This document shows positions 33,211 to 58,160 of a stretch of 64,000 nt of DNA, one piece after another. Under the pieces are notes generated by a model. The model was not told the origin of the DNA. It searched no databases and was given only the letters and a program-made list of their open reading frames with translations. The stretch covers positions 248,001-312,000 of IMG/VR virus record IMGVR_UViG_3300020469_003050, one strand, 5' to 3'. Positions within the stretch are counted from its first letter, which is position 1; each line of letters begins with the position of its first letter. Position numbers and translations under genes: made by a program.

Positions 33211-33215
33211 TAGAT

Positions 33216-36845: not shown

Positions 36846-37062
36846 ATAAGCATAAAACAATTTAGCGGTTGTTTTATTGTAGTGCAAGGAAGAGGCTGTT
36901 ACCAGACGGTCGAACTTGACTAGTTAGGGGTGGTACCCAGGCTTAAAGCTGAGAGGCTAAGAGTCACATCGTTCTACCGAACGGAACTAGGTTCCCTGGA
37001 TTCAGAATGGTATCTGTGTCGAGGGGTTGGGGGTGTAACCAAGTCCCTCCTACTTTGCTTAT
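36846..37062 (+). ncRNA. Free-standing structured ncRNA, ~217 nt, family unassigned
   Basis: GC-rich island with no long ORF, between promoter and terminator; 5' ATAAGCA pairs with 3' TGCTTAT; internal stems. Confidence 0.75.
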
Positions 37063-44453: not shown

Positions 44454-44982
44454 AGATGAAAGAGGGCGAAAGCCTTTTATTATCGCTAACCAACGTATCC
44501 GTGCAGACGAGTTACGTGTGGTAACAGACCAAGGTGAGCAACTTGGTATCATGCAAAAAAATCAAGCACAACAAAAAGCGGATGCTGACGGATTAGATTT
44601 AGTTCTTATAGTTCCTAACGCCAATCCTCCTGTAGCAAAAATCATTAGTATAAATAAGTACAACTACGAAATCAAAAAACGTGAGAAAGAGAAGGCAAAA
44701 CTAGCCAGACAAAATTCAGTTGAAGTTAAAGAAGTTAAGTTCAGACCAGCTATAGGCGAGAATGACCTAAAGATGAAACTTAACCAAGTTCAAAAGTTTA
44801 TTGACAAAGGCAATAAAGTAAAAGTGACAATACAAATGAGGGGCAGGGAAAATGCAAAAGCTACAGAAGTTTTAGCATATTTCAATTCCCAAATCTCTGA
44901 ATACTTGAGTAGTTTTAAGTATGACCTTCCTCTAAAAACTAACGGGAATAGAATAATAGGTGTAATAATAAAAAATGACTAG
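44437..44982 (+). CDS. infC: Translation initiation factor IF-3
   Basis: NQRIRA..GEQLGI..LDLVLI..PPVAKI..KEVKFRPAIGEND..KVKV..RGRE. Confidence 0.95.
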   Translation: MKRNFKDERGRKPFIIANQRIRADELRVVTDQGEQLGIMQKNQAQQKADADGLDLVLIVPNANPPVAKIISINKYNYEIKKREKEKAKLARQNSVEVKEVKFRPAIGENDLKMKLNQVQKFIDKGNKVKVTIQMRGRENAKATEVLAYFNSQISEYLSSFKYDLPLKTNGNRIIGVIIKND

Positions 44983-45241
44983 TTACAATAATAGTTATAG
45001 AAACAAAAATAATAGAAATGATTTTTCACAAACAGGTAAATCAGGTCTAACAGTAGAAGTAAGAAACGGGCAGTTTGAAAGAGCATTAAGAAAGTTCAAA
45101 AAGAAAGTGCAAGAAGCAGGTATCATACAGGAAGTACGAGACAGAAAGGCTTATGTTAAACCAAGTGAAGTTAAACGTAAGGCTAGGGACGCCGGAAAAA
45201 AACGTTGGTACAGAAAAATGAAAATGCAGGAACTAGAATAA
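44975..45241 (+). CDS. rpsU: 30S ribosomal protein bS21 with N-terminal extension
   Basis: VEVRNGQFERALRKFKKKV..GIIQEVRDRKAYVKPSEVKRK. Confidence 0.92.
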   Translation: MTSYNNSYRNKNNRNDFSQTGKSGLTVEVRNGQFERALRKFKKKVQEAGIIQEVRDRKAYVKPSEVKRKARDAGKKRWYRKMKMQELE

Positions 45242-45267
45242 AAAAGGGGAACCTAAGTCCCCCTTTT
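45241..45267. terminator. Bidirectional terminator
   Basis: AAAAAGGGGA-ACCTAAG-TCCCCTTTT; same CCTAAG loop as at 23771. Confidence 0.8.
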
Positions 45268-45289
45268 AATCTTAATAATTATGTCTCTA

Positions 45290-45607
45290 TTAGAACAAAT
45301 GATTATCAGAGAATTCTTCAAAGATAGGTTGACTATCAGCAAATCCTTGCATTTGAGTACCGATAGCAGTTTCAATAGCATTCATAGTTTCGTTGTTTGG
45401 ATAAACAACTGTAATCATGCCTTCAAACTTATCAGCAGTCAATTCTTCTTTGTATTTTGTAGCATCATTCAAATCAATACCGTTATCAGAAAGAATTGTT
45501 CTCATAAGGTTGTAATATGAACTGTAGCTATTCTCAGAAATCAGTTGAGCATTATCGTCATATTGTTTCACAATATGTGGATAAAATACTTTTGTTTCTT
45601 TAATCAT
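45290..45607 (-). CDS. Hypothetical late protein
   Basis: GGAGG SD; minus-strand GATAAATA at 45645-45652. Confidence 0.7.
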   Translation of the reverse strand: MIKETKVFYPHIVKQYDDNAQLISENSYSSYYNLMRTILSDNGIDLNDATKYKEELTADKFEGMITVVYPNNETMNAIETAIGTQMQGFADSQPIFEEFSDNHLF

Positions 45608-45675
45608 AATAGGTGGCCTCCTAAAGTCTGTTTGATTATACTGTTATTTATCAAAATTAAAATAAGGATTGTGAA

Positions 45676-45921
45676 TTGGATATAGATTTAGACAAATTAT
45701 CACTAAGAGAACTGCAACAAGAAAGCACCAGAGCATTGCTTACGCAGGACGGAACTAGTGTAGGTATCTCAAAATACAACAAAAAAGCTAATCATAATAG
45801 TCAATTATGGTACAAAGCAGTACTTGAAGACTATATTGAGAAATATGGTGGTTTACCTCGTGATGCAGGCCCATCTAAGGGAATTGTACTTTTTTCAGAA
45901 AAACTTGATAAAGGCACTTGA
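45676..45921 (+). CDS. Hypothetical protein
   Basis: TTG start, AAGGA SD. Confidence 0.6.
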   Translation: MDIDLDKLSLRELQQESTRALLTQDGTSVGISKYNKKANHNSQLWYKAVLEDYIEKYGGLPRDAGPSKGIVLFSEKLDKGT

Positions 45922-45979
45922 CATTTGGAAAAAAATCACTATATTATAATATATGCATAAAATTATGCATAAATAACTG

Positions 45980-46039
45980 TGTAGATTGCTTTAGATAGGA
46001 TCTACATTTAAATTAACTTGCTTAATAAAGGAGTAAACA
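45980..46039 (+). promoter_or_regulatory. ROSE-like RNA thermometer in hsp20 5'UTR
   Basis: ACUU(G)CUU pairs with AAGGAGU with a bulged G (UUGCU motif); upstream hairpin TGTAGAT/ATCTACA. Confidence 0.65.
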
Positions 46040-46483
46040 ATGACAAACGGACTATCTATTTTTAACCAGTTACGACCTGTAACTGTAGGCTTTGACAACA
46101 TGTTTGACCACTTTGAACGTATGTTCGATGGCGATGTTGCAACATTTCAAACTCAAGTAAACTTCCCACCTTACAATATCGTAAAGACTGGAGATTTCAC
46201 TTATGATGTAGAACTAGCATTAGCTGGATTCTCAAAAGATGATATTACAGTTGACTATGCTGATAACATTTTGACGGTTAAATCTGTTAAGAAAGAAAAA
46301 TCAGATGATGATAAAGACGGTGTTCTTCACAGAGGTATCTCTAAAAGAATGTTCTCTAAAGCATTCACTATTGCAGATGATGTTGAAGTGAAAGGTGCAG
46401 AGTTGAAAGACGGGTTACTGAAAATATCTTTAGAACGTATCGTTCCAGAAGGTAAGAAGCCTCGTAATATCGAAATATCATAA
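46040..46483 (+). CDS. Small heat-shock protein (Hsp20/IbpA-like)
   Basis: VGFD, FPPYNI, ELALAGF, LHRGIS.R.F, GAELKDGLL. Confidence 0.95.
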   Translation: MTNGLSIFNQLRPVTVGFDNMFDHFERMFDGDVATFQTQVNFPPYNIVKTGDFTYDVELALAGFSKDDITVDYADNILTVKSVKKEKSDDDKDGVLHRGISKRMFSKAFTIADDVEVKGAELKDGLLKISLERIVPEGKKPRNIEIS

Positions 46484-46501
46484 AATATTTCTAATCAAAA
46501 T

Positions 46502-46531
46502 AAAAGCGAGGGATTCGTTCCTCGCTTTTTT
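46502..46531 (+). terminator. Intrinsic terminator
   Basis: AAAAGCGAGG..CCTCGCTTTTTT. Confidence 0.85.
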
Positions 46532-46606
46532 ATATAAAAATCACTTGATAAATTCCTTTATAAATGCTATAATACAGATAAATACTATAGACAGTGAGGA
46601 AAATAA

Positions 46607-46921
46607 ATGCACGTACAAAACGATAGTGAAACAGTAGTTGATGCATCTACTAGGACTTCAATAGAACCTCCTAAGAGATATTATATTGTTATGCATAATG
46701 ATGATTCAACTCCTATAGATTTTGTAGTAAAGGTGTTAATCGAACTGTATAAACACGAAGACCAAACGGCGGCTGACCTAGCAAATAAAATTCACATAGA
46801 TGAAAAAGCTATTGTCGGCATGTTCAATTTAGAAATAGCAGAACAGAAGGTGGAAGAGACTCACGGAACAAGTAGGGCGCATGGTTACCCATTAACGGTA
46901 ACATTAGAACAAGCAGATTAA
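46607..46921 (+). CDS. clpS: N-degron adaptor ClpS
   Basis: PPKRY.IVMHNDDSTPIDFVV..IH..EIAEQK..YPL; early promoter 46545-46573 plus late box 46577. Confidence 0.92.
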   Translation: MHVQNDSETVVDASTRTSIEPPKRYYIVMHNDDSTPIDFVVKVLIELYKHEDQTAADLANKIHIDEKAIVGMFNLEIAEQKVEETHGTSRAHGYPLTVTLEQAD

Positions 46922-47656: not shown

Positions 47657-48334
47657 ATGAATTTAAAAATCTTACACGAATTAGATAGAATTCTAAAACA
47701 CAATCCAAGTTTGCAATCAAATAAACACACACTTTGCCAAGTTGTAAATGGTGTATTTGATATTGAACTAAAGCAAATTGATAATACAGAGGTTCATGCA
47801 CTAGCAGAGCAAATTGATAGAGAAGTGTTGTCAAACTATTTTAGTAGAGTTTGGCAACCTGAAACAAAGAAATACAAATATAGCGGTCTTTCAATCATAG
47901 ATGAAGTGAATGCAATGAACCCTGATAATGTAGTCGATATTGGTTGTGGTTATAACGAGTTCAAAGGAAAGATTAGTAATCTAGTTGGTATTGATCCGTA
48001 TAATGATAGAGCGGATATTAGTGTACATACATTAGATTATAAACCAGACGTTGAATTTGATGTTGCCATATGTTTAGGTAGTATTAATTTCGGTAGCAGT
48101 GATAAGATACTTAATGAACTTGAAAATGTAGTAAACATGGTCAAGTCAGGCGGGCTCTTATATTTCAGAGTTAATCCTGGTATTCAACATGATAAACCAG
48201 CGGCTAAATGGATTAACTTTTATGATTGGGATCCAATCTTCATTTCAAATGCCGCAGAACATCTTAATTGTAACGTATTAACATTACGCCAAGACGAAGG
48301 CGATAGATTTTATTTTGTTTTACGTAAAAAATAA
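47657..48334 (+). CDS. Class I SAM-dependent methyltransferase
   Basis: VVDIGCG, VGIDPY, FDVAICLGS, VKSGG. Confidence 0.8.
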   Translation: MNLKILHELDRILKHNPSLQSNKHTLCQVVNGVFDIELKQIDNTEVHALAEQIDREVLSNYFSRVWQPETKKYKYSGLSIIDEVNAMNPDNVVDIGCGYNEFKGKISNLVGIDPYNDRADISVHTLDYKPDVEFDVAICLGSINFGSSDKILNELENVVNMVKSGGLLYFRVNPGIQHDKPAAKWINFYDWDPIFISNAAEHLNCNVLTLRQDEGDRFYFVLRKK

Positions 48335-48372
48335 GCATATATAATTATATACGAATATAAATGATAAATAAA

Positions 48373-48492
48373 AGTAATACGGAGCCGTATTACTAATACA
48401 TGTATTGCAGAGTTGCAACATGTCTTATCTCACTTAAATCAAAAACAAGAAATAGGATATGGGTGTAATATGCAATTCCATATACTATTCTT
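48373..48492 (+). promoter_or_regulatory. Structured 5' leader of the tctC operon
   Basis: After late box 48363; AGTAATACG/CGTATTACT and two further stems. Confidence 0.4.
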
Positions 48493-48521
48493 TATAACTA
48501 AACTACATAAAGGAGAAATAT

Positions 48522-49577
48522 ATGTTTAGAAAATTAGTAATGACAGTTGCATTGACTTTAGGTCTAGCAACATCGGCATTAGCTGATTATACATTGATTG
48601 TTCCTCAGGAGCCTGGTAAAGGTACTTCTGTATGGGGAGAAATCATTGCTAAGAACTTAGAAAAGTTCATCGGTGAACCAGTCGTAGTTCGACATATCCC
48701 AGGTGCAAGAGATATTCCTGGATTCAATAAATTCCACAAAAGCCTACGTTTTGATGACAAAACAATCATGGTTGCACACGGTGGTAACGGTGTATCATAC
48801 TTACTAGATAAAGTTGATTACAATTATTTCGATTATGAACTAATTGGTTCAATGAACAATGATATCGTTCTTGGTAAGCATGAAGGCGCAAGTGAAAAAG
48901 AAGACCATTGGACAATCGCAGGCGGATCAGGTTTCGAACCAGATGCGGCGGCAGTTGCAATGTTAATCTGTGGACCAACAGGTAATAATTCAGTTGATGA
49001 TTATCTAGCATGTTGGAGAGAACGTGTAACTTGGGTTAACGGCGTATCAGGCGGTGAAAAACGTCTTGGTTTTAAAAACGGCGAATTCGATGTAGCACGT
49101 GAATCACCAGCGGCATGGAAACGTTTCTATGAAGGTATTGAAGGTAATGAACTATGGTTCACACACGGCATCCTAGACTTAGAAAACAATGTACAAATGG
49201 CAGATCCAAACTTCCCTAACACACAGTTTGAGGATGTATACGAGTCACTATGGGGCGAAAGACCATCAGGTGATTTATATCAAGCATATAAACTAACTCG
49301 TAACTGGCGTGATGCTATTCAAAAATCACTTTGGATGAACAAAGGTAACCCAAATGCGGCAAAAGTTAAAGCGGCTGTAACTGAAATGATTAATGATCCA
49401 GTTGCAAGTGCAGAGATTTATGCTAAGACTGGTGTTTACCCTTGGATTCAAGATGGACCAGCTTTATTGGCGGCTTTGAAATCTTTAATTACAGAGAAAG
49501 CACTTAAAGATGCGGTTCGTTGGAACCAAGAAGCATATGGCTTCCCATCAATCTATAAGCCTGAACTTTTAAACTAA
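48522..49577 (+). CDS. Tripartite tricarboxylate transporter substrate-binding protein (TctC/Bug-like)
   Basis: Signal peptide; LIVPQEPGKGT..IAKNLEK..PVVVRHIPGA; GG..GEFDV. Confidence 0.75.
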   Translation: MFRKLVMTVALTLGLATSALADYTLIVPQEPGKGTSVWGEIIAKNLEKFIGEPVVVRHIPGARDIPGFNKFHKSLRFDDKTIMVAHGGNGVSYLLDKVDYNYFDYELIGSMNNDIVLGKHEGASEKEDHWTIAGGSGFEPDAAAVAMLICGPTGNNSVDDYLACWRERVTWVNGVSGGEKRLGFKNGEFDVARESPAAWKRFYEGIEGNELWFTHGILDLENNVQMADPNFPNTQFEDVYESLWGERPSGDLYQAYKLTRNWRDAIQKSLWMNKGNPNAAKVKAAVTEMINDPVASAEIYAKTGVYPWIQDGPALLAALKSLITEKALKDAVRWNQEAYGFPSIYKPELLN

Positions 49578-49587
49578 GGATATAGCT

Positions 49588-51096
49588 ATGGATTATGTTA
49601 TCTGGGCATTAATTGGCACCTGTTATGGAATGCTAGTTGGTATTATACCTATCGCAGGTGTAACTACCGCCCTGATAACTGTCTTTAGCATGGGAGCATA
49701 CTTTATGGCCGACCCCTATTTGGGGTTGGTCTTTTTAACGGCTATCGTGGCAAGTTGTGCCAGTGCAGATAGTTACACAAGTATTCTTACTGGTATTCCA
49801 GGCGCAAGTACAACTGCGGCATGTGTTATTGATGGTTATCCTATGGCGAAGAAAGGCCAAGCGGCCAGGGCAATGGGAATTGCTATCGCAGATTCAACAT
49901 TTAATGGTGTAGTATTTGCGGCTCTAACCTTTTTCTTACTTCCTTATTATGGGAAAGTAATTGTATTATTTGGTCGTCCAGAATTTCTGGGCTTCATGTT
50001 GATGGCACTTGCATGTGTAGGTTTCGTTGCAAGTAAGAATGTTTTCTTAAGTATCTGTGCAATCATATTTGGATTATGTGTGGGTATGGTAGGAGAAGAT
50101 GTTGTAAGTAATCCTAGATTAACATTTGGTTGGGAATATTTACAAAACGGAATAGGCATGGTTGTTCTATTATCAGGTCTGTTTGGTGTTCCAGAATTAT
50201 TAGATGGATTTAGAAGAAAACTAAAATCAGCGGCACCTCCAATGGAAGGAAGTTATTGGGAAGGGCTAAAAGAAGGTTTTGGTGATGTTCGAAAGAATTG
50301 GAAAGATATGATGCGTGGTGGTCTAATTGGTTTTGTTACTGGTTTGTTACCAGGTGTAGGAGGCGCAGTAGGTGACTTCTTAGCATACGGTGCCACAAAA
50401 GCCGCACATAAAGATAAAGACCAAGAAGTACCTTTTGGATCAGGGAATCCAGTAGGGTTATTAGGCTGTGAAGGAGCCAACAACGCACAGAAAGTATCTA
50501 GTATGATACCTGCTTGTTTGTTTGGTATTCCAGCGGCGCCATTTGCGGCTATGGTTATGGCAATCTGTATGTATTTTGGTATGGAAATCGGTACACCTAG
50601 TTTACTAGATGATATTCAATTTACAAATAGTTTAGCATTTGGATATATCTTTGGAACTATTGGTGTAGCACTATTAAGTATATTCTTATACAAATGGATT
50701 CTTAAAGTACTAGAAGTTCCTTTCTGGATTTACGCAACATTTATTTTAGCAGTAATTGTTTATGCTAATATGCAATACACAGGTGGTTGGGAAGACCTAG
50801 CCTTACTGGCTATATTAAGTGCTATTGGTGTTGTATGTAAAATATACAATATTAGTAGACCAGCTATTCTTGTTGCATATGTTGTAGCATTTAAAATTGA
50901 TGAGTATTTTTGGGGAACATTACAGTTGTATGGTTACAAACAATGGAAACCAGGGTTAACTTCAATGTCAGATTTTAGATGGTTTGACTTATTCAACATT
51001 TATAATCACCCTATCTTTCTTGTGTGTATTCTTATAGCTTTAGGAATATTCATAAATAGTCTTGTAAGAAAAGATAAAGGACTCGATTATACATGA
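49588..51096 (+). CDS. Tripartite tricarboxylate transporter large permease (TctA)
   Basis: SILTGIPGASTTAACVIDGYPMAKKGQAARA, GLLPGVG, EGANNA, GIP. Confidence 0.9.
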   Translation: MDYVIWALIGTCYGMLVGIIPIAGVTTALITVFSMGAYFMADPYLGLVFLTAIVASCASADSYTSILTGIPGASTTAACVIDGYPMAKKGQAARAMGIAIADSTFNGVVFAALTFFLLPYYGKVIVLFGRPEFLGFMLMALACVGFVASKNVFLSICAIIFGLCVGMVGEDVVSNPRLTFGWEYLQNGIGMVVLLSGLFGVPELLDGFRRKLKSAAPPMEGSYWEGLKEGFGDVRKNWKDMMRGGLIGFVTGLLPGVGGAVGDFLAYGATKAAHKDKDQEVPFGSGNPVGLLGCEGANNAQKVSSMIPACLFGIPAAPFAAMVMAICMYFGMEIGTPSLLDDIQFTNSLAFGYIFGTIGVALLSIFLYKWILKVLEVPFWIYATFILAVIVYANMQYTGGWEDLALLAILSAIGVVCKIYNISRPAILVAYVVAFKIDEYFWGTLQLYGYKQWKPGLTSMSDFRWFDLFNIYNHPIFLVCILIALGIFINSLVRKDKGLDYT

Positions 51097-51839
51097 TACA
51101 CAAAACAAATTGGTCTAAGACCTTAAAAGACCCGTCTGAATTCGAATCGAATTGGGATTGGACAGTAGCACATAGCGAATATCATTTTGACGATAACAAA
51201 GTTGATAAAGAAGGTGAATGGTTTAAGGTTTTAGGCCGATTTGATAATCCAGATTTGTGGAAAGAAGATAGAGATAAATTAGTTGAGCAATCAACAAAAG
51301 CAATTAATTGGGAAACTCGTAAATTCTACGGAGATAGAGAAGACGAGTCCCCAATGTTGAAACAAGAAGAACATGATATTGCACAAGGTGGTGGGGACCC
51401 TAAAAAACTTATGCTTACAAATATGAAAGATGAGTTAGAAGATTATCCAATGCTTGTTAAAATGAAAGAACACTTTGGAGTAATAGGCGGAAAAGACGAA
51501 TTAAAATACCGGGCCCATGTACAGTTAACAGGTCAAATGTTTAATTTACATATTGATAAACTATGGGATAGATGTATCGATGATCCAGAACAAGTATGTC
51601 GTATTACATTTTTCTTAGATGATTGGAAACCAGGACAGTTTTATATGTATGGAAATTGTATCTACGAAAGATGGAAAGCTGGTGAGGCTCATATTTTTGA
51701 TTGGGCTAACGCACCACATGCCACTGCAAACGCAAGTAATTTTCCTAGACCAAGTATTCAGATTACAGGATTAAAATCTGAAAAGACTAGAGAAATCATT
51801 GCTAACGGATCACGTGATACAGTATGGACACTAGAGTAA
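51093..51839 (+). CDS. 2OG-Fe(II)/Asp-beta-hydroxylase-like oxygenase
   Basis: LHID, WKAGE, PHATAN, R..Q.TG. Confidence 0.7.
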   Translation: MIHKTNWSKTLKDPSEFESNWDWTVAHSEYHFDDNKVDKEGEWFKVLGRFDNPDLWKEDRDKLVEQSTKAINWETRKFYGDREDESPMLKQEEHDIAQGGGDPKKLMLTNMKDELEDYPMLVKMKEHFGVIGGKDELKYRAHVQLTGQMFNLHIDKLWDRCIDDPEQVCRITFFLDDWKPGQFYMYGNCIYERWKAGEAHIFDWANAPHATANASNFPRPSIQITGLKSEKTREIIANGSRDTVWTLE

Positions 51840-52024
51840 GAAGCCTTGTTAAAACTGTATCTTGGAGATTAACAGGAACTCTTTGTACATTTTTAATCAG
51901 TTATGCAATACTACGTGATTTAACTATCAGTGGTTCTATTGCAGTAATTCAATTAACAGCCAACACAGTTGCATTCTATATACATGAACGTATATGGAAC
52001 CTAGTAAAATGGGGTAAACGTTGA
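51824..52024 (+). CDS. DUF2061 small membrane protein
   Basis: RSLVKTVSWRL..FYIHERIWN..WG. Confidence 0.85.
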   Translation: MDTRVRSLVKTVSWRLTGTLCTFLISYAILRDLTISGSIAVIQLTANTVAFYIHERIWNLVKWGKR

Positions 52025-52662
52025 AACCAATATTAACAATAATGACAGGTCCACAAGGAAGTGGTAATCATTTATTCAGTAAAGTATTAGGACAAAATAA
52101 AAATATATTTGTATGGCCGAATCTACAAGAAAAATATTGGGAAGGACATGATTTAGAACCCTTTGCAGAATGCTGGAAAGACCCATCAAAACTAAAAGAT
52201 TTTGATTGGAGACAAAGCAATTATTTCATCACAAGTATCAGTTGTCCTTATTTTGATGATGGAGTAGAAACTATACCACAATATAATGAGTTTATAAATA
52301 TAGCGAAGAAATTTGCTGATATTCAATTTCTTATACTTGGTAGAGATAGAAACATTATGAAATTGCAACAAGAACGTGTAAGAGGAAAACATACTACTCC
52401 TGAATTTATGACACAAATAGATAGTATAATTTTTAATTTTAGGACTATCTTTGCAAGCCAAGAAATGTTATACTTATATAAGTTAAATTATCTACAGTGG
52501 TTAGAAAAAGAATTAGGATTGTATCCAATAGAAATAACATTAGACGATATTAAATTATTAGATGTATTACGTAAAGATGCAAATGAAAAATACATATCAC
52601 AAACAGAGTCAGAACTAGACGAAGTAATAAAATTAGCAAGTAGTCGGAAAGGGGCAATATGA
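52021..52662 (+). CDS. Sulfotransferase-like P-loop protein
   Basis: TGPQGSGNHLFSKVL (5'-PSB-like), ILGRD (3'-PB-like). Confidence 0.55.
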   Translation: MKPILTIMTGPQGSGNHLFSKVLGQNKNIFVWPNLQEKYWEGHDLEPFAECWKDPSKLKDFDWRQSNYFITSISCPYFDDGVETIPQYNEFINIAKKFADIQFLILGRDRNIMKLQQERVRGKHTTPEFMTQIDSIIFNFRTIFASQEMLYLYKLNYLQWLEKELGLYPIEITLDDIKLLDVLRKDANEKYISQTESELDEVIKLASSRKGAI

Positions 52663-53150
52663 AAATTTTAATATTTGGTTTACCAGGAAGTGGCAAGAGT
52701 ACTCTTGCTGAACCATTAGCAAAACTTCTTGGAGGGTTTCATGTCAACGCAGATAAAGTACGAGAAAAATATGAAGGACATGATATGAGTAAATGGGACT
52801 TTAGTCCTGAAGGACGTATGAGACAAGCACAAAGAATGAAATTCATTAGTGATGGTGTAGTTATGGCTGGCAAAATTGCGGTTGCTGACTTTGTTTGCCC
52901 CACACAAAAAGCAAGAAAAGAATTTGGTGCAGACTTTACAGTGTGGATGGATACTATTGAAGAAGGTAGATACGAAGATACAAACAAAATGTTTGAAAAG
53001 CCTAGTGCCTATGAAAGAGATTATCATGTCGCAAAATGGTTTGATGATACTCATGTACAGTTAGTACCTATCGTAGAAAGATATATGAAGAAAACATCAA
53101 CAACACCTGTAGGATACAGTGCATGGAGATTAGATAATGACGATATTTAA
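52659..53150 (+). CDS. cysC: Adenylyl-sulfate (APS) kinase-like protein
   Basis: GLPGSGKSTLA, NADKVR, DFSPEGR, DFVCP..R, FEKP. Confidence 0.8.
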   Translation: MKILIFGLPGSGKSTLAEPLAKLLGGFHVNADKVREKYEGHDMSKWDFSPEGRMRQAQRMKFISDGVVMAGKIAVADFVCPTQKARKEFGADFTVWMDTIEEGRYEDTNKMFEKPSAYERDYHVAKWFDDTHVQLVPIVERYMKKTSTTPVGYSAWRLDNDDI

Positions 53151-53547
53151 TACATTTAAACCCACAACACAAATGCTAGGTAGATGGCAACCCTGGCATG
53201 ATGGACATACTGAATTATTTAAACGTGCATTAGCAGAAACAGGGCAAGTTTGTATTCAGATTAGAACTGTGCCACAACAAGAAGATGCAAGTGGAGGGCG
53301 TACAGTAGTACAAGATGATAATCCTTTTATTGCTACAGATGTAGAAGAAAACATTAAGAAAGAATTAGAAAAAGTAGGATATACATATGGGCATGAGTAT
53401 ATCATAATGAGAGTGCCTAATATAGTAGATATTAGCTATGGAAGAGGCGTAGGTTATACGTTCACAGAACATGACTTAGGAAAAGAGATACATAGTATTA
53501 GTGCTACAAAAATACGAGCAGAAATGCGAAAGGAAGGCAAATTATAA
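53137..53547 (+). CDS. HIGH-family nucleotidyltransferase (cytidylyltransferase-like / minimal ATP sulfurylase candidate)
   Basis: GRWQPWHDGH, ISATKIR. Confidence 0.8.
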   Translation: MTIFNTFKPTTQMLGRWQPWHDGHTELFKRALAETGQVCIQIRTVPQQEDASGGRTVVQDDNPFIATDVEENIKKELEKVGYTYGHEYIIMRVPNIVDISYGRGVGYTFTEHDLGKEIHSISATKIRAEMRKEGKL

Positions 53548-53575
53548 ATTGACTTTATAATTTGAATTTGTTATA

Positions 53576-53800
53576 ATGAACATAGTATATATTAAATACG
53601 CAAGTGCAATCTTAATATTAGTTGCCATGGTTTTACATGTTGCAGGTATTACACCATGGAATAGTATCATACAAATGATAGGAGCAAGTGGTTGGATATA
53701 TGTGGGCTATAAATGGAATGAAAAAGCAATTATATTAAATTTCTTACCACAGTTTGCAATCATAATACCAATGCTAATATGGATTTATTGGATTAGTTAA
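53576..53800 (+). CDS. Small membrane protein (DUF6552-like)
   Basis: GWIYVGYKWNEKAIILN. Confidence 0.6.
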   Translation: MNIVYIKYASAILILVAMVLHVAGITPWNSIIQMIGASGWIYVGYKWNEKAIILNFLPQFAIIIPMLIWIYWIS

Positions 53801-53810
53801 GGAAAATAAA

Positions 53811-54524
53811 ATGACAGTAGGTGTAATCTCCGCAATCCCAGAAGAATATTCAAAGTTAAGGTGGGATAGTGAACCAAGAACTGAAACGATTATCAATAAG
53901 ATTTTTCAATTCGGTACAATGAATGATGTAAAAGTTATTGCCGCAGAATGCGGTATTGGTAAAGTTAATGCAAGTATGACAACTTCATTGCTTTTAGGAC
54001 ATTTCGGATGTGATAGTATCATATTCTCAGGTGTAGCAGGAGGGTTAAATCCAAAATATAACATTGGTGATGTATTAGTTGCAGAACAACTTATTCAGCA
54101 TGATTATGGTGCAATAGTAAATGGTCAAGTAATTAGTGCTATACCGGGTAGTTTCCCAGGCATGGTAGATGAGAACGAAGATGTATCATATAAAATGTCA
54201 TTAGACATGCGTGAAGCAATCAAAAGAAATGTAGACGATGATATAAAGTTTGGTAGAATTTTAACAGGTGATACATACCTTGCTTGTTCTAAAACAAGAG
54301 AAATGTTTCATAAACAATTTAAAGCAGATGCAATAGAAATGGAAGGAGGAGCAATCGCTCAAGTGTGTTGTAATTGGCATAAACCATTTGTTGTTATACG
54401 TGTATTAAGTGATTTATCAGGAAATGATTCGCATTTCGATTTTAATGAATTTGTTGACGAAAGTTCAGCAAAGTCGGCAATAGTTGTAAATAGACTATTA
54501 CCGGTATTGGACGCATGGGCATGA
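53811..54524 (+). CDS. mtnN: 5'-methylthioadenosine/S-adenosylhomocysteine nucleosidase
   Basis: GIGKVNA, SGVAGG, QHD, TGD, EMEGGAIAQ, RVLSD. Confidence 0.93.
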   Translation: MTVGVISAIPEEYSKLRWDSEPRTETIINKIFQFGTMNDVKVIAAECGIGKVNASMTTSLLLGHFGCDSIIFSGVAGGLNPKYNIGDVLVAEQLIQHDYGAIVNGQVISAIPGSFPGMVDENEDVSYKMSLDMREAIKRNVDDDIKFGRILTGDTYLACSKTREMFHKQFKADAIEMEGGAIAQVCCNWHKPFVVIRVLSDLSGNDSHFDFNEFVDESSAKSAIVVNRLLPVLDAWA

Positions 54525-54964
54525 TTGAGAAATTTGAAGATACTCCTTTTGAAAAAAATAAACAAAAAGTAATAGAAGAAACAGAATACTATAAAGCATT
54601 TGAAGACAAATGGCCCGTATGTGAAGGTCATTTGCTTTTTGTTCCTAAAGAAAATAACACAAAATTCATTACAATAGCCCTACAAGCAACTGTCCAGTAT
54701 GGTGAAAAGCTAATTGAAGAAGGTAAAATCGATGGTTATCATTTTGGAATGAATATGAGAAAGCCAGCTGGTCAATCAGTTATGTGGCCTCATGTTCATT
54801 TTATGCCAAGAAAAGAAGGCGATATAGAAGGTTTTCCCGGAAGTGTAAGATTTGCAGTTAGAAATGGCAAAGGCCCATCGTACTATATGGAACACCCTAA
54901 ATACAAAGAAGAATTTATTGAAAAACATCAAAAAGAAATAGAAGAGGACGGATTTAATTTTTAA
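54521..54964 (+). CDS. HIT-family nucleotide hydrolase
   Basis: PVCEGHLLFVPK, AGQSVMWPHVHFMPR. Confidence 0.88.
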   Translation: MIEKFEDTPFEKNKQKVIEETEYYKAFEDKWPVCEGHLLFVPKENNTKFITIALQATVQYGEKLIEEGKIDGYHFGMNMRKPAGQSVMWPHVHFMPRKEGDIEGFPGSVRFAVRNGKGPSYYMEHPKYKEEFIEKHQKEIEEDGFNF

Positions 54965-56406
54965 TGAATGATAAAACTTTCTGCATTGCTCCATGGCATG
55001 ATGTTCATATTATAACAGACGGAACATTCAAAGGGTGTTGCGTGATGAACCACGGAGAAGTAGGAGGGAGACTTTTAACTAACGGTGTTGTTCACACAGT
55101 AACAGATAGTGGTGTGAATGGTGCAATGAATTCTGATACAAGTAAAGAATTAAGATTAGATATGCTACAAGGTAAATGGCATACTAATTGCACACGATGT
55201 AAAAATGAAGAAGCATCTGGTATGCGTAGTATGAGACAGTTATACGGAGACAGATGGAAAAACTTTACATACAAAGATGCAGAGAAAATAACTAATTTAG
55301 ATACTGGCGAAATACCAGTAGACCACAAACCTTTCTATTATGATATTCAGTTAGGTAATTTATGTAATCTTAAATGTAGAATTTGTAATCCACTAGTTAG
55401 TTCTGCTTGGATACCTGATTACATGAAAATGATGAGATTAGGTAATAAAGCTGAGATTAAAGTAAGAGGCGGTAAGAAACCTTTTAAGATTGATATTGAA
55501 CACGTAAAAGGTAAACAATATAATATTTCACCTAATCCATTTGCGTGGGCAGAGTCAGATGAATTTTGGGAACAAATGTCTGCTATTAAAGGAGAGATTG
55601 ACCATCTATATTTGATTGGGGGCGAACCAATGATGATTCATAGACACTTTAAGTTTTTAGAAGAATGCGTAGAAAGTGGTGATGCGAGTCATATTACATT
55701 ACAGTATGATACTAACTTAACAAACATTCCTGAAAAAGTTATGGGATATTGGTCTCATTTTAAATCTCTAATGATTGGTTTTAGTATTGATGGCATGGGT
55801 CCAGAGTTAGAATACATGAGACACCCTGTAAAGTGGTCGCATATTCTTAGAAATATAAACAGAGTAGAAGAATTTGCAAAGAAAAATGATAACGTTAAGT
55901 TAAATGATTCTATCACAATCAATACATATAACGTACTTCATATACTTGATTTCATTGAATGGAAAGTAAAAGCAGGTAAAAATGATTATGAATTTTTATG
56001 GCAATGGCATGATGAGAACTTTTGTGCCCATCCATTGCATGGTCCTGATTTTTTGTGTGTTAAGACTATGCCATTGAGTGCTAAAAAATATGTTACTCAG
56101 AGATATTACGAATGGCGTGATAAAATGCATGAATGGTGTGATAGTATTGATTACTACACAAAGAGGCGTAAACCAGAAGATATCAAAATTGCAGTAACTA
56201 AGTTTGTCGATAGATGGGTAGAATTCATCAACCAAGAAGATTGGTCTCATAGAGTATGGAAATTCTGGGAGTATACGAATGACCTAGATGAAGTCAGAGG
56301 TGAGAATTTTAAAGAAGTATTCCCTGAACTTGCTAAGATTATGTGGGATTATCCAAAGAAACCTAGCTGGATGTTTGCCCCTACGAATACGTATCCAACA
56401 GAATAA
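54964..56406 (+). CDS. Radical SAM protein with N-terminal SPASM/twitch-like domain
   Basis: FCIAPW..GCC..CTRC; NLCNLKCRIC; GGEP; SIDG. Confidence 0.9.
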   Translation: MNDKTFCIAPWHDVHIITDGTFKGCCVMNHGEVGGRLLTNGVVHTVTDSGVNGAMNSDTSKELRLDMLQGKWHTNCTRCKNEEASGMRSMRQLYGDRWKNFTYKDAEKITNLDTGEIPVDHKPFYYDIQLGNLCNLKCRICNPLVSSAWIPDYMKMMRLGNKAEIKVRGGKKPFKIDIEHVKGKQYNISPNPFAWAESDEFWEQMSAIKGEIDHLYLIGGEPMMIHRHFKFLEECVESGDASHITLQYDTNLTNIPEKVMGYWSHFKSLMIGFSIDGMGPELEYMRHPVKWSHILRNINRVEEFAKKNDNVKLNDSITINTYNVLHILDFIEWKVKAGKNDYEFLWQWHDENFCAHPLHGPDFLCVKTMPLSAKKYVTQRYYEWRDKMHEWCDSIDYYTKRRKPEDIKIAVTKFVDRWVEFINQEDWSHRVWKFWEYTNDLDEVRGENFKEVFPELAKIMWDYPKKPSWMFAPTNTYPTE

Positions 56407-56456: not shown

Positions 56457-57467
56457 ATGATGATTTTTTTAGTAAGATATTTTATAAAATGGGTTATTCA
56501 GGGTTGGATCCTTGCCAGATTAGCCAAAAGAGTTAGAAAGGCATTAGTAAAAAAGTACAATTTAGAAGGCAAATTTAAAGAAACTGTTAAGAACAAAAAA
56601 GATATAGATTGGAAAAAGATTAAATGGTATGCTGAATTAGCCGGTTATATTTACAAAGATAACAAAAGTATTCAGAAAAAGTACAAGAATCTTGATAAGA
56701 AAATATACATAAACGAGATTAACGAAATCAAGTACTGCATTATAACTGATAATCACAGACAAGCATATTATATATCAATAAGAGGCACGAAGAATTCTCA
56801 TAATGCAATGCAAGATATTAACTTTTTCAAAGATAAGAGTTTCAGACTAGGTATAGAATTACACACAGGCTTTCATAGAACTGCCGAAATGATAGCAGAT
56901 GATATCATGGGTAGATTAGATAAGACTTGGGATATAACTGTAACTGGTCATAGTTTAGGTGGTGCAGAAGCAGTAATCGTAAGTTGGTATTTAGATTATG
57001 CAGGATTTAAAGTTTCTGAGTGTATTACATACGGTCAACCTAAAGTAACAGATTCACACGGTACTAGAGCAATGAGAGGTAAGATTAAACTTACACGTAT
57101 TGTTAATGAAACAGATATAGTTGCATTAGTCCCACCAGCTGGAACGCATAGACATAGATATGCTCATAGTGGTACATTAATTAAATTGCTAGACAATGGT
57201 AAATATTGTCATTTAGAAGAACCAGATAGTTTAAACTTTGGTGTGAATAGTTTCTGGTTGTTCGCGGCAAGAGAAGATTTTTCATTTTGGGAAGTTGGCA
57301 AAGAACTGCCCGACCATTACATGACAGGTTACATCGACAATATTGATAAAATAGTCGATAATGGCGAAGAGGTCTTATGGAATAAAAGACTAGAACATAT
57401 TGAAGACAGTGGCATGTTAGGTGAATGGGTGAAAGATGATAAGAAGAAAGGTAAGGGTAAAAAATAG
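56457..57467 (+). CDS. Lipase class 3
   Basis: IRGT, HTGF, TGHSLGG, TYGQP, DIV, DH; late box at 56417, GGAGG SD. Confidence 0.88.
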   Translation: MMIFLVRYFIKWVIQGWILARLAKRVRKALVKKYNLEGKFKETVKNKKDIDWKKIKWYAELAGYIYKDNKSIQKKYKNLDKKIYINEINEIKYCIITDNHRQAYYISIRGTKNSHNAMQDINFFKDKSFRLGIELHTGFHRTAEMIADDIMGRLDKTWDITVTGHSLGGAEAVIVSWYLDYAGFKVSECITYGQPKVTDSHGTRAMRGKIKLTRIVNETDIVALVPPAGTHRHRYAHSGTLIKLLDNGKYCHLEEPDSLNFGVNSFWLFAAREDFSFWEVGKELPDHYMTGYIDNIDKIVDNGEEVLWNKRLEHIEDSGMLGEWVKDDKKKGKGKK

Positions 57468-57704
57468 ATGGAAGATAAATTAATCGACATTGACCATTTA
57501 GATAAAGCAGAAGCAAATTGGTTTACTCATTTTTACAAGGCGATGTATTTTAACGGTATTGGTTTGCTAATGGTAATAACAGGCATTATTCATGCTTTCT
57601 TTCCACAGTTTTTTGGATTTCTTCCATATAAACTTGCAAAGAAAATAACAGACGGGACAGAAAAGAACTTTCCTGGTTGTTTGAAAGATGCCAATAAAAA
57701 GTAA
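57468..57704 (+). CDS. DUF6356-like small protein
   Basis: HLDKAEANWFTHF..GIIHAFFP. Confidence 0.6.
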   Translation: MEDKLIDIDHLDKAEANWFTHFYKAMYFNGIGLLMVITGIIHAFFPQFFGFLPYKLAKKITDGTEKNFPGCLKDANKK

Positions 57705-57716
57705 TTGGAGAGGATT

Positions 57717-58157: not shown

Positions 58158-58160
58158 AGA

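What the first reader, a model, noticed from the sequence alone, without database searches (positions are those of the whole stretch)
48363..53547. Candidate phage sulfur-uptake / PAPS-synthesis / sulfation operon
Seen: one late promoter (GATAAATA 48363) heads a tightly coupled run of TctC-like binding protein, TctA permease, 2OG-Fe(II) oxygenase, DUF2061, a sulfotransferase-like P-loop protein, an APS-kinase-like protein and a HIGH-motif nucleotidyltransferase (HDGH...ISATKIR). Established: ATP sulfurylase (Sat) belongs to the HIGH nucleotidyltransferase superfamily; APS kinase makes PAPS, the sulfotransferase donor; some TTT transporters import sulfonates such as sulfolactate; TauD/AtsK-type 2OG oxygenases release sulfite or sulfate from organosulfur substrates. 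Inference: a self-contained route that imports an (organo)sulfur compound, activates it to PAPS using a minimal 136-aa ATP sulfurylase, and sulfates a late target (virion glycan or protein, DNA, or host surface). I know of no characterized phage system with this full layout.
Basis: partly seen in the sequence, partly recalled or inferred. Interest (0 to 1): 0.8.

Follow-up and report, generated by a model that had tools for sequence, protein, structure and literature searches.

The report
Phage transporter, tailoring and PAPS-like operon
A marine jumbo phage carries a transcribed gene cluster with an uptake system, hydroxylase, methylase and sulfotransferase-like enzymes, and a widespread viral kinase/adenylyltransferase pair that probably makes the sulfate donor PAPS; the "organosulfur import" part of the original idea has no support.

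Summary

Synteny over about 150 viral loci splits the region into modules.
- **Core:** methyltransferase, TctC-like protein, TctA, an AspH/LpxO-type (not TauD) 2OG oxygenase, and a sulfotransferase-fold protein (g213). This core is kept down to 35-59% identity.
- **Kinase/adenylyltransferase pair:** a divergent APS kinase next to a 136-aa adenylyltransferase. The two are adjacent in 73 of 77 other viral loci, fused in some, and often have DUF2061 between them. Those loci have no transporter or g213.

In cells, DUF2061 sits in cysDNC, cysQ, cysIJ and methionine clusters and is fused to PAP phosphatases. That ties the viral pair to PAPS metabolism.

The adenylyltransferase is homologous to NadM-type NMN adenylyltransferases, not to ATP sulfurylase. 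"Minimal ATP sulfurylase" is therefore possible but unproven. g213 lacks the basic residue of the sulfotransferase PAPS loop. Nothing indicates what the transporter carries.

Verdict: a real operon. The PAPS/sulfation theme is partly supported, and the full pathway as written is unlikely.

The parts
47657..48334 (+). MT225: class-I SAM methyltransferase-like protein, upstream of the promoter motif and part of the co-conserved core
   Evidence: Weak Methyltransf_23 hit (E 1e-3). A DIGCG-type SAM motif is visible in the translation. It is found with TctC, TctA, g248 and g213 in divergent loci, including L024, L026, L062 and L153.
48363..48370 (+). GATAAATA promoter-like motif
   Evidence: 19 copies in the window against 7.2 expected. 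About 10 of the 16 copies on the + strand are intergenic, 4-61 nt before an ORF. Similar motifs precede TctC in relatives. One metatranscriptome contig starts at 48380.
48371..48521 (+). Structured 5' leader with two hairpins directly after the motif
   Evidence: MFE -38.5 kcal/mol, z -4.65. 5 of 16 predicted pairs show compensatory changes in 6 related sequences. No Rfam family matches.
48522..49577 (+). TctC-like periplasmic solute-binding protein with a signal peptide
   Evidence: No Pfam hit. The Atlas model of a look-alike viral cluster (feature score 0.99) matches a bacterial TctC cluster at TM 0.79. 20-24x depth in four RNA libraries, against 0-10x for the rest of the operon.
49588..51096 (+). 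TctA large permease subunit of a tripartite tricarboxylate transporter
   Evidence: PF01970, E 5e-87, covering 422 of 423 model positions. 85-97% identical across 30+ IMG/VR contigs.
51093..51839 (+). g248: 2OG-Fe(II) oxygenase of the Asp/Asn beta-hydroxylase (AspH/LpxO) type
   Evidence: No Pfam hit. Atlas feature score 0.97 to viral PF05118 clusters. H153, D155, H209 and R219 are conserved in 18 homologs and paralogs.
51824..52024 (+). DUF2061 small membrane protein with two hydrophobic segments
   Evidence: PF09834, E 3e-20. It lies between the kinase and NT in about 20 other viral loci. Cellular homologs are fused to CysQ or a PHP-type PAP phosphatase, and neighbour cysNDC, cysQ, cysIJ and methionine genes.
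52021..52662 (+). g213: sulfotransferase-fold protein with a non-canonical P-loop (GPQGSGNH), TTG start
   Evidence: AF2 pLDDT 92. VIA-align Z 12.8 to 4gox and 12.0 to TPST1, against 9.7 or less for the best non-sulfotransferase P-loop fold. Atlas TM 0.6-0.7 to viral Sulfotransfer_1/3 clusters. No Pfam or PDB sequence hit.
52659..53150 (+). kin163: divergent APS-kinase-family P-loop kinase (a 'viral cysC')
   Evidence: PF01583 33.1 bits, above the cut-off of 21.1. The family profile hits PDB APS kinases at E 5.6e-12. For a fused homolog, the top 33 Foldseek hits are APS kinases, with Z 15.6.
53137..53547 (+). NT136: NadM-like HxGH adenylyltransferase, the obligate partner of the kinase
   Evidence: The family profile hits archaeal and NadM-type NMNATs at E 6e-10 to 2e-6, PPAT at 0.025, and no ATP sulfurylase at E <= 10. 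It is adjacent to the kinase in 73 of 77 viral loci and fused to it in L127, L133, L137, L138, L153 and in phages Sano and DLP6.
53576..53800 (+). DUF6552 small membrane protein with three hydrophobic segments
   Evidence: PF20189, E 1.6e-9. It travels with either g213 or the kinase/NT pair in several loci.
53811..54524 (+). 5'-methylthioadenosine/S-adenosylhomocysteine nucleosidase (MTAN)
   Evidence: NF004079 196.9 bits, above the cut-off of 169. PF01048, E 2e-42.
54515..54964 (+). HIT-family nucleotide hydrolase/transferase
   Evidence: PF01230 38.5 bits, above the cut-off of 21.5.
54964..56406 (+). Radical-SAM protein with a SPASM-like Cys-rich N-terminus; last gene of the unit
   Evidence: Radical_SAM E 3e-5 and SPASM E 1.4e-3, both below their cut-offs. 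A CxxxCxxC motif is visible in the translation. The next GATAAATA is at 56417.

Best explanation
The region is one late-type transcription unit (about 48363-56406) of a roughly 340-kb marine jumbo phage. It joins separable modules.

**Module A.** A TctC/TctA uptake system with a set of tailoring enzymes: SAM methyltransferase MT225, AspH/LpxO-type 2OG hydroxylase g248 and sulfotransferase-fold protein g213. These genes stay together in very divergent phages.

**Module B.** A widespread viral pair made of a divergent APS kinase (kin163) and a NadM-derived adenylyltransferase (NT136), usually accompanied by the small membrane protein DUF2061.
- Most likely it supplies PAPS, or a close 3'-phospho-adenylyl analogue, for phage sulfotransferases.
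- The kinase would phosphorylate the 3'-OH of APS.
- APS would come either from NT136 acting as a non-orthologous sulfate adenylyltransferase or from the host.

**Module C.** MTA/SAH nucleosidase, a HIT protein and a radical-SAM enzyme. MTAN would remove SAH and 5'-deoxyadenosine, which inhibit the methyltransferase and the radical-SAM enzyme.

**Net function (inferred).** Hydroxylation, methylation and probably O-sulfation of one target during late infection. The target could be an imported small molecule or a host or virion macromolecule.

**Shown:** gene content, folds, family relationships, co-conservation, and presence in RNA libraries.

**Inferred:** every substrate, PAPS as the product, and sulfation as the outcome.
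For: **The kinase belongs to the APS kinase family.**
- Pfam score is above the gathering cut-off.
- The family profile hits PDB APS kinases at E 5.6e-12. In that alignment NAD-x-x-R lines up with DGD-x-x-R, and W-D-F-S, G-R and F-V-x-P line up with the APS-binding G-F-S, D-R and F-I-S-P.
- For a fused homolog, the 33 best Foldseek hits are APS kinases. Z is 14.4-15.6 for five APS kinases, against 14.0 for gluconokinase, 10.7 for dephospho-CoA kinase and 10.0 for NR kinase.

**The kinase and NT are coupled.**
- They are adjacent in 73 of 77 viral loci and fused in several.
- The order is kinase then NT, as in animal PAPS synthase.

**DUF2061 links the pair to sulfur metabolism.**
- It lies between the kinase and NT in about 20 viral loci.
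- In cells it is fused to CysQ (TIGR01331, 279 bits, above the cut-off of 228.8) and to a PHP-type 3',5'-bisphosphate phosphatase.
- It neighbours cysN-cysD-cysC and cysQ, cysJ-cysI, a CysQ-like gene, and O-acetylhomoserine sulfhydrylase with metH.
- It sits in a nodH-nodPQ locus.

**Sulfotransferase-like proteins sit beside the pair.**
- g213 has a sulfotransferase fold.
- Weak sulfotransferase Pfam hits lie next to the pair in unrelated phages: L112 at E 7e-4, L068 at E 0.02, and Xylella phage Sano gp33 at E 4e-4.

**The set is co-conserved.**; contig L153 carries the whole set.

**The region is found in RNA libraries.** Exact contigs from four RNA libraries cover it, with TctC at 20-24x and the rest at 0-10x.

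**Literature.** Viral cysC is a known marine and freshwater auxiliary gene that usually lacks cysDN.
Against: - NT136 is homologous to NMN adenylyltransferases and shows no similarity to ATP sulfurylase. To my knowledge, no member of that clade is known to adenylylate sulfate.
- The kinase matches APS kinase only over its first 85-95 residues, its lid is shortened, and it scores far below the NCBIfam equivalog cut-off: 26 bits against 139.
- g213 has no Lys or Arg in the loop that binds the 5'-phosphosulfate of PAPS in characterised sulfotransferases, and it has no sequence-level family hit.
- Most kinase/NT loci show no recognisable sulfotransferase within 7 kb.
- In phage Sano a NADAR gene lies between the sulfotransferase-like gene and the kinase-NT fusion, which hints at NAD or ADP-ribose chemistry.
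- The transporter substrate is unknown.
Confidence: 0.5

Rival explanations
1. NAD(P)-type cofactor salvage. NT136 is a true NMN (or NaMN) adenylyltransferase. The kinase phosphorylates a nucleoside or nucleotide precursor such as nicotinamide riboside, like a reversed NadR. DUF6552 or the TTT system would import the precursor. The pair would rebuild NAD+ during infection and would be unrelated to g213.
For: - The NT family profile hits NadM-type NMNATs at E 6e-10 to 2e-6, with GRxQPxHxGH, NPF and ISxTxIR motifs.
- JGI names one homolog an NMN adenylyltransferase.
- A NADAR gene is adjacent in phage Sano.
- Some TTT binding proteins bind nicotinate or nicotinamide (my own knowledge).
- In Sano and DLP6 the fusion lies among nucleotide-metabolism and replication genes.
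Against: - The kinase's closest relatives are APS kinases, not NR kinases: Nrk1 has Z 10.0 against 15.6, and the NadR-type AAA_28 model matches only the P-loop.
- NT136 is 30-45 residues shorter than NadM enzymes, and the profile match covers only about the first 80 positions.
- No NAMPT, Nudix or PnuC genes were seen among the commonest neighbour clusters.
- The sulfur context of DUF2061 goes unexplained.
Confidence: 0.2
2. One reading: TTT import of an organosulfonate or sulfate ester, sulfite or sulfate release by the 2OG oxygenase, APS formation by a minimal ATP sulfurylase (NT136), PAPS formation by the kinase, and sulfation by g213.
For: - All components are co-located, and they are co-conserved in L153.
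- The evidence for an APS kinase, a sulfotransferase fold and a sulfur link for DUF2061 is as given for the best explanation.
- One TTT system is known to carry sulfolactate (my own knowledge).
Against: - g248 is AspH/LpxO-like and has no TauD hit.
- The kinase/NT pair occurs about 75 times without the transporter or oxygenase.
- The core occurs without the kinase/NT pair within 8 kb in L005-L011, L022-L026 and L062.
- NT136 is not related to Sat.
- Related TctCA pairs sit with methyltransferases and B12 radical-SAM enzymes, not with sulfonate catabolism genes.
Confidence: 0.07
3. The transporter feeds the oxygenases. TctCA imports a di- or tricarboxylate such as 2-oxoglutarate or citrate to fuel the co-encoded 2OG-dependent oxygenase paralogs or host energy metabolism. 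The neighbouring genes would be an unrelated mix of auxiliary genes that share a late promoter.
For: - Carboxylates are the default substrates of the TTT family (family knowledge).
- Arrays of g248 paralogs lie beside TctCA, three in tandem in L057.
- A 2OG-FeII_Oxy_3 gene lies next to TctCA in L155.
- TctC has by far the highest depth in the RNA libraries.
Against: - g213 and MT225 stay linked to TctCA down to 35-48% identity and through gene rearrangements, which argues for a shared pathway.
- L157-L159 have TctCA with no 2OG oxygenase.
Confidence: 0.15

Closest known systems
PAPS synthase (animal PAPSS1/2; fungal and bacterial Sat-CysC fusions; rhizobial NodPQ with sulfotransferase NodH; Xanthomonas RaxPQ with RaxST)
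   Same: - An APS-kinase-family domain is coupled or fused to an adenylyltransferase-superfamily domain, in the PAPSS order (kinase N-terminal).
- A sulfotransferase-fold gene is adjacent.
- DUF2061 also occurs in a nodH-nodPQ locus.
   Different: - The adenylyltransferase is a 136-aa NadM-like protein, not Sat (about 400 aa with a PUA-like domain) and not CysDN.
- The kinase has a shortened lid and NAD in place of DGD.
- No activity has been shown.
Viral cysC auxiliary metabolic genes (Kieft et al. 2021, bioRxiv 10.1101/2021.01.05.425418; Chen and Banfield 2024, PMC10914622)
   Same: - These are marine and freshwater phage genes called APS kinase, found on larger genomes and transcribed in situ.
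- kin163 is probably of this kind, but I did not compare its sequence with the genes in those papers.
   Different: - Those papers read cysC as assimilatory sulfate reduction.
- In the passages I read they do not mention the obligate NadM-like partner, the interleaved DUF2061 or any sulfotransferase. The word 'sulfotransferase' does not occur in Kieft et al..
NadM-type NMN adenylyltransferase (M. jannaschii 1f9a; Francisella and Synechocystis NadM-Nudix) and NadR
   Same: - GRxQPxHxGH, NPF and ISxTxIR motifs.
- Significant profile match (E 6e-10).
- NadR also pairs an NMNAT with a P-loop kinase.
   Different: - NT136 is 30-45 residues shorter.
- The match covers only the N-terminal two-thirds.
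- It scores 27.8 bits against a curated cut-off of 127.
- R43 stands where 1f9a has Gly in its GIGS loop.
- The partner kinase is APS-kinase-like, not RNK-like.
PAPS-dependent sulfotransferases (TPST1/2, the olefin synthase/CurM sulfotransferase domain, NodH, Stf0)
   Same: - Overall fold: Z 11-13, with 166-174 aligned residues.
- A G-R-D-x-N-I...Q-Q stretch lies where the 3'-phosphate-binding R...S motif would be (my mapping).
   Different: - No Pfam sulfotransferase hit.
- The loop GPQGSGNH has no Lys or Arg.
- At 213 aa it is smaller than the 250-300 aa of characterised enzymes.
Tripartite tricarboxylate transporters (TctCBA, the Bug family, SlcHFG)
   Same: A full-length TctA and a TctC-fold binding protein with a signal peptide lie side by side.
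   Different: - No ORF in the operon matched a TctB model.
- The binding protein is too divergent for the Pfam TctC model.
- It is encoded by a phage and linked to tailoring enzymes rather than to catabolic genes.

Membership tests
APS kinase (CysC; PF01583 / TIGR00455) | Walker A P-loop and a family-model score above the curated threshold | tested here: inconclusive
   The motif GLPGSGKS is present. Pfam APS_kinase scores 33.1 bits against a cut-off of 21.1, so that threshold is met. The generic AAA_33 model scores higher, at 37.1. The NCBIfam equivalog TIGR00455 scores 26.4 bits against 138.7, so that threshold is not met.
APS kinase (CysC; PF01583 / TIGR00455) | APS-site motifs: DGDxxR, GFS, DR and (I/V)SP | tested here: met
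   In the profile alignment to 2yvu, N30-A31-D32-x-x-R35 aligns with D-G-D-x-x-R; the first Asp is Asn. W46-D47-F48-S, G52-R53 and F78-V-x-P81 align with G-F-T, E-R and F-V-S-P. All are invariant or nearly so in 11 homologs.
APS kinase (CysC; PF01583 / TIGR00455) | Closest structural neighbours are APS kinases | tested here: met
   This was tested on the fused homolog L127, which is 60% identical to kin163. Foldseek ranks 1-33 are all APS kinases. VIA-align Z is 15.6, 15.6, 15.0, 14.7 and 14.4 for APS kinases, against 14.0 for gluconokinase.
APS kinase (CysC; PF01583 / TIGR00455) | Converts APS and ATP to PAPS | not testable with these tools
   This needs an enzyme assay.
ATP sulfurylase (Sat, PF01747) | Sequence homology to Sat, including QxRNPxHxxH and the GRD loop | tested here: not met
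   No ATP sulfurylase appears among PDB hits at E <= 10 with a 29-sequence profile. There is no Pfam or NCBIfam Sat hit. The N-terminal motif is GRWQPWHDGH. The invariant YGR(G/D)VGY only loosely recalls GRDHAG.
ATP sulfurylase (Sat, PF01747) | About 400 aa with an N-terminal PUA-like domain | tested here: not met
   NT136 is 136 aa and is a single Rossmann-like domain.
ATP sulfurylase (Sat, PF01747) | Forms APS from ATP and sulfate | not testable with these tools
   This needs an enzyme assay, coupled to pyrophosphatase and the kinase.
NadM-type NMN adenylyltransferase | GRxQPxHxGH and NPF motifs and a significant profile match | tested here: met
   E 6e-10 to 1f9a, 8e-9 to 4yp7 and 1.3e-8 to 2qjt, and the motifs align.
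NadM-type NMN adenylyltransferase | Full-length match above the curated family threshold, including the C-terminal NMN-binding part | tested here: not met
   PRK01153 scores 27.8 bits against 127, and TIGR01527 scores 24.1 against 181. The profile alignment covers only positions 9-82 of 120. NT136 is 136 aa against 168-181 aa.
NadM-type NMN adenylyltransferase | Genomic association with other NAD salvage genes | tested here: inconclusive
   No such genes appear among the commonest neighbour clusters of 78 loci. A NADAR gene is adjacent in phage Sano.
PAPS-dependent sulfotransferase | Sulfotransferase fold | tested here: met
   The model has pLDDT 92. Z is 12.8 to 4gox and 11.2-12.0 to TPST1/2, and the top 11 hits are all sulfotransferases. 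The best non-sulfotransferase P-loop fold scores 9.7 or less. Atlas TM is 0.60-0.70 to Sulfotransfer_1/3 clusters.
PAPS-dependent sulfotransferase | 5'-phosphosulfate-binding loop with Lys or Arg (PKSGTT / PRSGTT) | tested here: not met
   The loop is G10-P-Q-G-S-G-N-H17 and is invariant in 40 homologs. It contains no basic residue. K21 is the nearest invariant Lys.
PAPS-dependent sulfotransferase | 3'-phosphate-binding Arg with Ser eight residues later | tested here: inconclusive
   R108 and Q116 are invariant and have the right spacing. No structural superposition was available to confirm that they are equivalent.
PAPS-dependent sulfotransferase | Sequence-family membership (PF00685, PF13469, PF17784 and others) | tested here: not met
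   None of the 40 members has a Pfam hit, and there is no PDB sequence hit.
Tripartite tricarboxylate transporter | TctA permease | tested here: met
   PF01970, E 5e-87.
Tripartite tricarboxylate transporter | TctC (Bug) binding protein | tested here: inconclusive
   There is no PF03401 hit. The Atlas feature score is 0.97 to TctC-containing clusters, and the model of a look-alike viral cluster (not the window protein itself) matches a TctC cluster at TM 0.79.
Tripartite tricarboxylate transporter | TctB small membrane subunit | tested here: not met
   No ORF of the operon matched a TctB model. The small membrane proteins present are DUF2061 and DUF6552.
TauD/AtsK sulfonate or sulfate-ester dioxygenase | Membership of the TauD family (PF02668) | tested here: not met
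   There is no Pfam hit at E <= 0.1. The nearest named family is Asp_Arg_Hydrox, PF05118.
2OG-Fe(II) oxygenase superfamily | HxD/E...H iron triad and a 2OG-binding Arg | tested here: met
   H153 and D155 are invariant, and H209 and R219 are at least 90% conserved in 18 sequences.

The most novel reading that the evidence does not exclude
The NT136 family is a previously unrecognised class of sulfate adenylyltransferase derived from NadM-type NMN adenylyltransferases. Together with the viral 'CysC' and the membrane protein DUF2061, it would form a minimal, virus-borne PAPS synthase of about 280 aa in total, sometimes in one polypeptide. This would let phages sulfate targets in hosts that cannot activate sulfate themselves. 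g213 would be its client: a sulfotransferase with a P-loop that lacks the usual basic residue.
Probability: 0.3. Interest if true: 0.85.

Novelty: new variant of a known kind. Interest (0 to 1): 0.62.

Why it matters
- **Viral cysC may have been read in the wrong pathway.** These genes are counted in surveys as "assimilatory sulfate reduction" auxiliary genes. Here the kinase almost never travels alone. It comes with a NadM-like adenylyltransferase and often with DUF2061, and it sits beside sulfotransferase-fold genes. That points to PAPS supply for sulfation rather than to cysteine synthesis.
- **A possible third route to APS.** If the adenylyltransferase makes APS, it would be an independent solution for sulfate activation, after Sat and CysDN.
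- **A first functional handle on DUF2061.** This family has several thousand members at 50% identity (4,846 representatives at E <= 0.001). The link to sulfate and PAP metabolism is the first lead on what it does.
- **An abundant phage transporter.** The phage-encoded TctC-like protein has much higher depth in ocean RNA libraries than the rest of the operon, and its ligand can be tested directly.

Tried and rejected
- **Riboswitch in the 152-nt leader.** No Rfam family matches at gathering score, and only chance-level hits appear at E <= 10. The leader is structured, but it is conserved only among close relatives.
- **Isolated phages.** No record in the phage collection carries this TctA lineage or g213. 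TctA hits are at most 30% identical and are on gut or enterobacterial records.
- **Sequence-level assignment of g213.** The Pfam scan of 40 members and the PDB profile search both came back empty.
- **Cellular context of the TctC lineage.** The seven genome-contig hits are short MAG contigs with inconsistent taxonomy, and at least L153 and L154 look like mis-binned phage DNA. They gave no catabolic context.
- **Sulfotransferases near other kinase/NT loci.** A profile of the g213 family found none. A motif scan found only three candidates, two of them with sub-threshold Pfam sulfotransferase hits.
- **Literature.** I found no description of the kinase-NT-DUF2061 module or of a phage TTT system with an assigned function. 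tctA was noted as a viral gene of unknown role in SUP05 viruses.

Full report
**Source and observation.** The window is part of IMG/VR contig 3300020469_003050, a 342.6-kb marine phage contig. Pfam confirms TctA (E 5e-87), DUF2061 (E 3e-20) and an APS_kinase-type P-loop kinase (33.1 bits against a cut-off of 21.1). It gives only a weak cytidylyltransferase-like hit for the 136-aa protein.

The TctC-like, 248-aa and 213-aa proteins have no Pfam, NCBIfam or PHROG hit.

**The promoter-like motif.** GATAAATA is over-represented: 19 copies against 7.2 expected, and 0 of 100 shuffles reach 19. Of the 16 copies on the + strand, about 10 lie in intergenic DNA 4-61 nt before an ORF, in a window that is 94% coding.

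The canonical T4 late motif TATAAATA is not enriched.

The gene run does not end at 53547. DUF6552, an MTA/SAH nucleosidase (196.9 bits against a cut-off of 169), a HIT protein and a radical-SAM/SPASM-like protein follow without a break up to 56406. The next GATAAATA is at 56417.

**Transcription.** Contigs from four RNA libraries, drawn from at most three samples, match the region exactly. TctC is covered at 20-24x, while TctA and the downstream genes are at 0-10x. One contig starts at 48380, ten bases after the motif.

The uneven depth argues that the reads come from RNA rather than contaminating DNA. However, these are assembled contigs, so neither the 5' end nor co-transcription is proven.

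The 152-nt leader folds well (z -4.65). It has two hairpins with some compensatory changes in close relatives and matches no Rfam family.

**What the unassigned proteins are.**
- **g213.** The AF2 model has pLDDT 92. Its 11 best VIA-align matches are all sulfotransferases: the olefin-synthase sulfotransferase domain at Z 12.8, TPST1/2 at 11.2-12.0, then SULT7A1 and Teg12. The best non-sulfotransferase P-loop fold reaches 9.7.
  - The ESM Atlas places it next to viral Sulfotransfer_1/3 clusters at TM 0.6-0.7.
  - Its invariant loop GPQGSGNH has neither the Walker lysine nor the Lys/Arg of the sulfotransferase 5'-phosphosulfate loop.
  - R108 and Q116 have the spacing of the 3'-phosphate motif.
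- **g248.** It has the iron triad H153-x-D155...H209 plus R219. Its nearest named family is the Asp/Asn beta-hydroxylase (AspH/LpxO) family, not TauD. The structural neighbours of a look-alike viral cluster include bacterial multidomain proteins that combine this hydroxylase domain with a Sulfotransfer_3 domain.
- **TctC-like protein.** The Atlas model of a look-alike viral cluster matches a bacterial TctC cluster at TM 0.79.

**Synteny shows separable modules.** Among 64 loci fetched with g213 and TctA, the set MT225 + TctC + TctA + g248 + g213 stays together down to 35-48% identity, even where the gene order changes (L024, L026, L062). The kinase/NT pair is absent from many of these loci or has moved upstream.

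In the other direction, a kinase profile retrieved 80 loci from more than 327 relatives.
- In 73 of 77 loci the NT gene directly follows the kinase.
- In about 20 loci DUF2061 lies between the two.
- In several loci the two are one ORF.
- None of these other loci has g213, TctC or TctA.

These other loci are T4-like. They carry UvsW, and they carry KdsA, KdsB, an epimerase, a carbamoyltransferase and a cupin nearby.

The same fusion is PHROG 10255. It occurs in Xylella phages Sano and Salvo and in Stenotrophomonas phage DLP6.

A distant contig (L153, labelled as a MAG but phage-like) repeats the whole set at 36-59% identity: two MT genes, TctC, TctA, g248, g213, a fused kinase-NT of 277 aa, and DUF2061. 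So the combination recurs, but the parts are independent.

**The kinase.**
- The family profile hits PDB APS kinases at E 5.6e-12. The alignment places N-A-D-x-x-R on D-G-D-x-x-R, and it conserves the Phe and Arg residues that hold APS.
- In a model of a natural fusion (pLDDT 85), the 33 best Foldseek hits are APS kinases. Five APS kinases lead the VIA-align list at Z 14.4-15.6, just above gluconokinase at 14.0 and well above dephospho-CoA kinase (10.7) and NR kinase (10.0).
- The match covers only the first 85-95 residues, and the lid region is shortened.

**The adenylyltransferase.**
- A 29-sequence profile hits archaeal and NadM-type NMN adenylyltransferases at E 6e-10 to 2e-6, then PPAT at 0.025. 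No ATP sulfurylase appears at E <= 10.
- The GRxQPxHxGH and NPF motifs are NadM-like.
- The protein is 30-45 residues shorter than NadM enzymes, and R43 stands where 1f9a has Gly in its GIGS loop.
- It is therefore not a member of the Sat family. Whether it can use sulfate cannot be decided by computation.

**DUF2061 is the new link to sulfur.** A profile search of 1.84 billion representatives found 4,846 proteins, most of them tandem DUF2061.
- Longer members are fused to CysQ (TIGR01331, 279 bits against a cut-off of 228.8) or to a PHP-type 3',5'-nucleoside bisphosphate phosphatase (best hit, but below its cut-off).
- All four look-ups that returned neighbouring genes show sulfur assimilation genes:
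  - cysN-cysD-cysC next to DUF2061-cysQ
  - cysJ-cysI-DUF2061
  - an Inositol_P gene next to DUF2061
  - O-acetylhomoserine sulfhydrylase, two DUF2061 genes, then metH and MTHFR
- A preprint reports DUF2061 inside a Mesorhizobium nod locus with nodH, nodP and nodQ.

This independently ties the viral kinase-DUF2061-NT trio to sulfate and PAPS metabolism.

Weak sulfotransferase Pfam hits also lie near the pair in unrelated phages: L112 at E 7e-4, L068 at E 0.02, and Sano gp33 at E 4e-4. In Sano, gp33 is separated from the fusion by a NADAR gene.

**Interpretation.** The most likely reading is a late operon that combines three things:
- an uptake system with hydroxylase, methylase and sulfotransferase-like tailoring enzymes;
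- a portable cofactor module that makes PAPS or a close analogue;
- enzymes that clear SAM by-products for the methyltransferase and the radical-SAM enzyme (by established knowledge, MTAN hydrolyses SAH and 5'-deoxyadenosine).

My rough estimates are as follows.

| Claim | Estimated probability |
|---|---|
| The kinase acts on APS | about 0.6 |
| NT136 makes the APS | about 0.3 |
| g213 is a PAPS-dependent sulfotransferase | about 0.5 |
| The transporter carries a sulfur compound | about 0.2 |

The main rival is NAD-type salvage by an NMNAT plus a kinase. NT136's homology and the NADAR neighbour support it. The kinase's family and DUF2061's context weaken it.

**Comparison with the literature.** Viral cysC is already reported as a marine and freshwater auxiliary gene that is transcribed in situ. 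tctA has been noted on SUP05 viral contigs with an unknown role. I found no description of the obligate NadM-like partner, the interleaved DUF2061, the link to sulfotransferase-fold genes, or a phage TTT system tied to tailoring enzymes. I therefore rate this a new variant of a known kind, with one reading (a NadM-derived sulfate adenylyltransferase) that would be new enzymology if confirmed.

Noticed in passing
window 33167-33489: The phage encodes an alphaproteobacterial-type, two-piece (permuted) tmRNA (RF01849 at 122.6 bits; RF04321 at 114.4 bits). This hints at an alphaproteobacterial host.
   Followed up: no
window 36861-37059: A manA RNA motif (RF01745, 59.8 bits against a gathering score of 55.2) lies in an intergenic region.
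   Followed up: no
window 43179-46921: A run of host-like proteostasis and translation genes lies just upstream: ClpX (43179-44453), translation initiation factor IF3 (44437-44982), a small heat-shock protein (46040-46483) and ClpS (46607-46921).
   Followed up: no
window 48371-48521: The leader before TctC is unusually long (152 nt) and structured (z -4.65). Two hairpins sit directly after the promoter-like motif and show some compensatory changes in close relatives. No Rfam family matches.
   Followed up: partly
window 48380-49700: In four marine RNA libraries TctC is covered at 20-24x, while TctA and the downstream genes are at 0-10x. Depth drops within about the first 100 nt of TctA.
   Followed up: partly
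L146, L147, L149-L152 and proteins P0268, P0319: In cells, DUF2061 is embedded in cysNDC/cysQ, cysJI and metH/sulfhydrylase clusters, and it is fused to two unrelated PAP phosphatase families. This is a functional lead for an uncharacterised family.
   Followed up: yes
L065 (Xylella phage Sano) 4960-6729: Three genes lie in a row: gp33 with a sub-threshold Sulfotransfer_4 hit (E 4e-4), gp34 with a NADAR domain, and gp35, the kinase-NT fusion annotated only as 'kinase'.
   Followed up: partly
L157, L158, L159 (MAG contigs): Related TctA/TctC pairs are flanked by class-I SAM methyltransferases and B12-binding radical-SAM enzymes. This TTT subfamily seems generally tied to tailoring enzymes.
   Followed up: partly
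L012 2856-3563 (-), L153 844-1443, L155 9063-9665 (-): A second P-loop-like protein family of 200-235 aa, with the N-terminal motif FFTG(A/V)PGS(K/R)WS, recurs next to the TTT genes. Two members (L153, L155) gave no Pfam hit at E <= 0.01, and the third (L012) gave none at E <= 1.
   Followed up: partly
L057 9567-11749; L041 9506-12638; L105 55-4429: There are tandem paralog arrays of the AspH-like oxygenase (three in L057) and of the radical-SAM/SPASM-like protein (four in L105) in related phage loci.
   Followed up: no
window 56457-58991: The next transcription unit encodes a class-3 lipase, a staphylococcal-nuclease-like protein, and a glycoside hydrolase 19 protein with a peptidoglycan-binding domain, which is a likely endolysin.
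   Followed up: no
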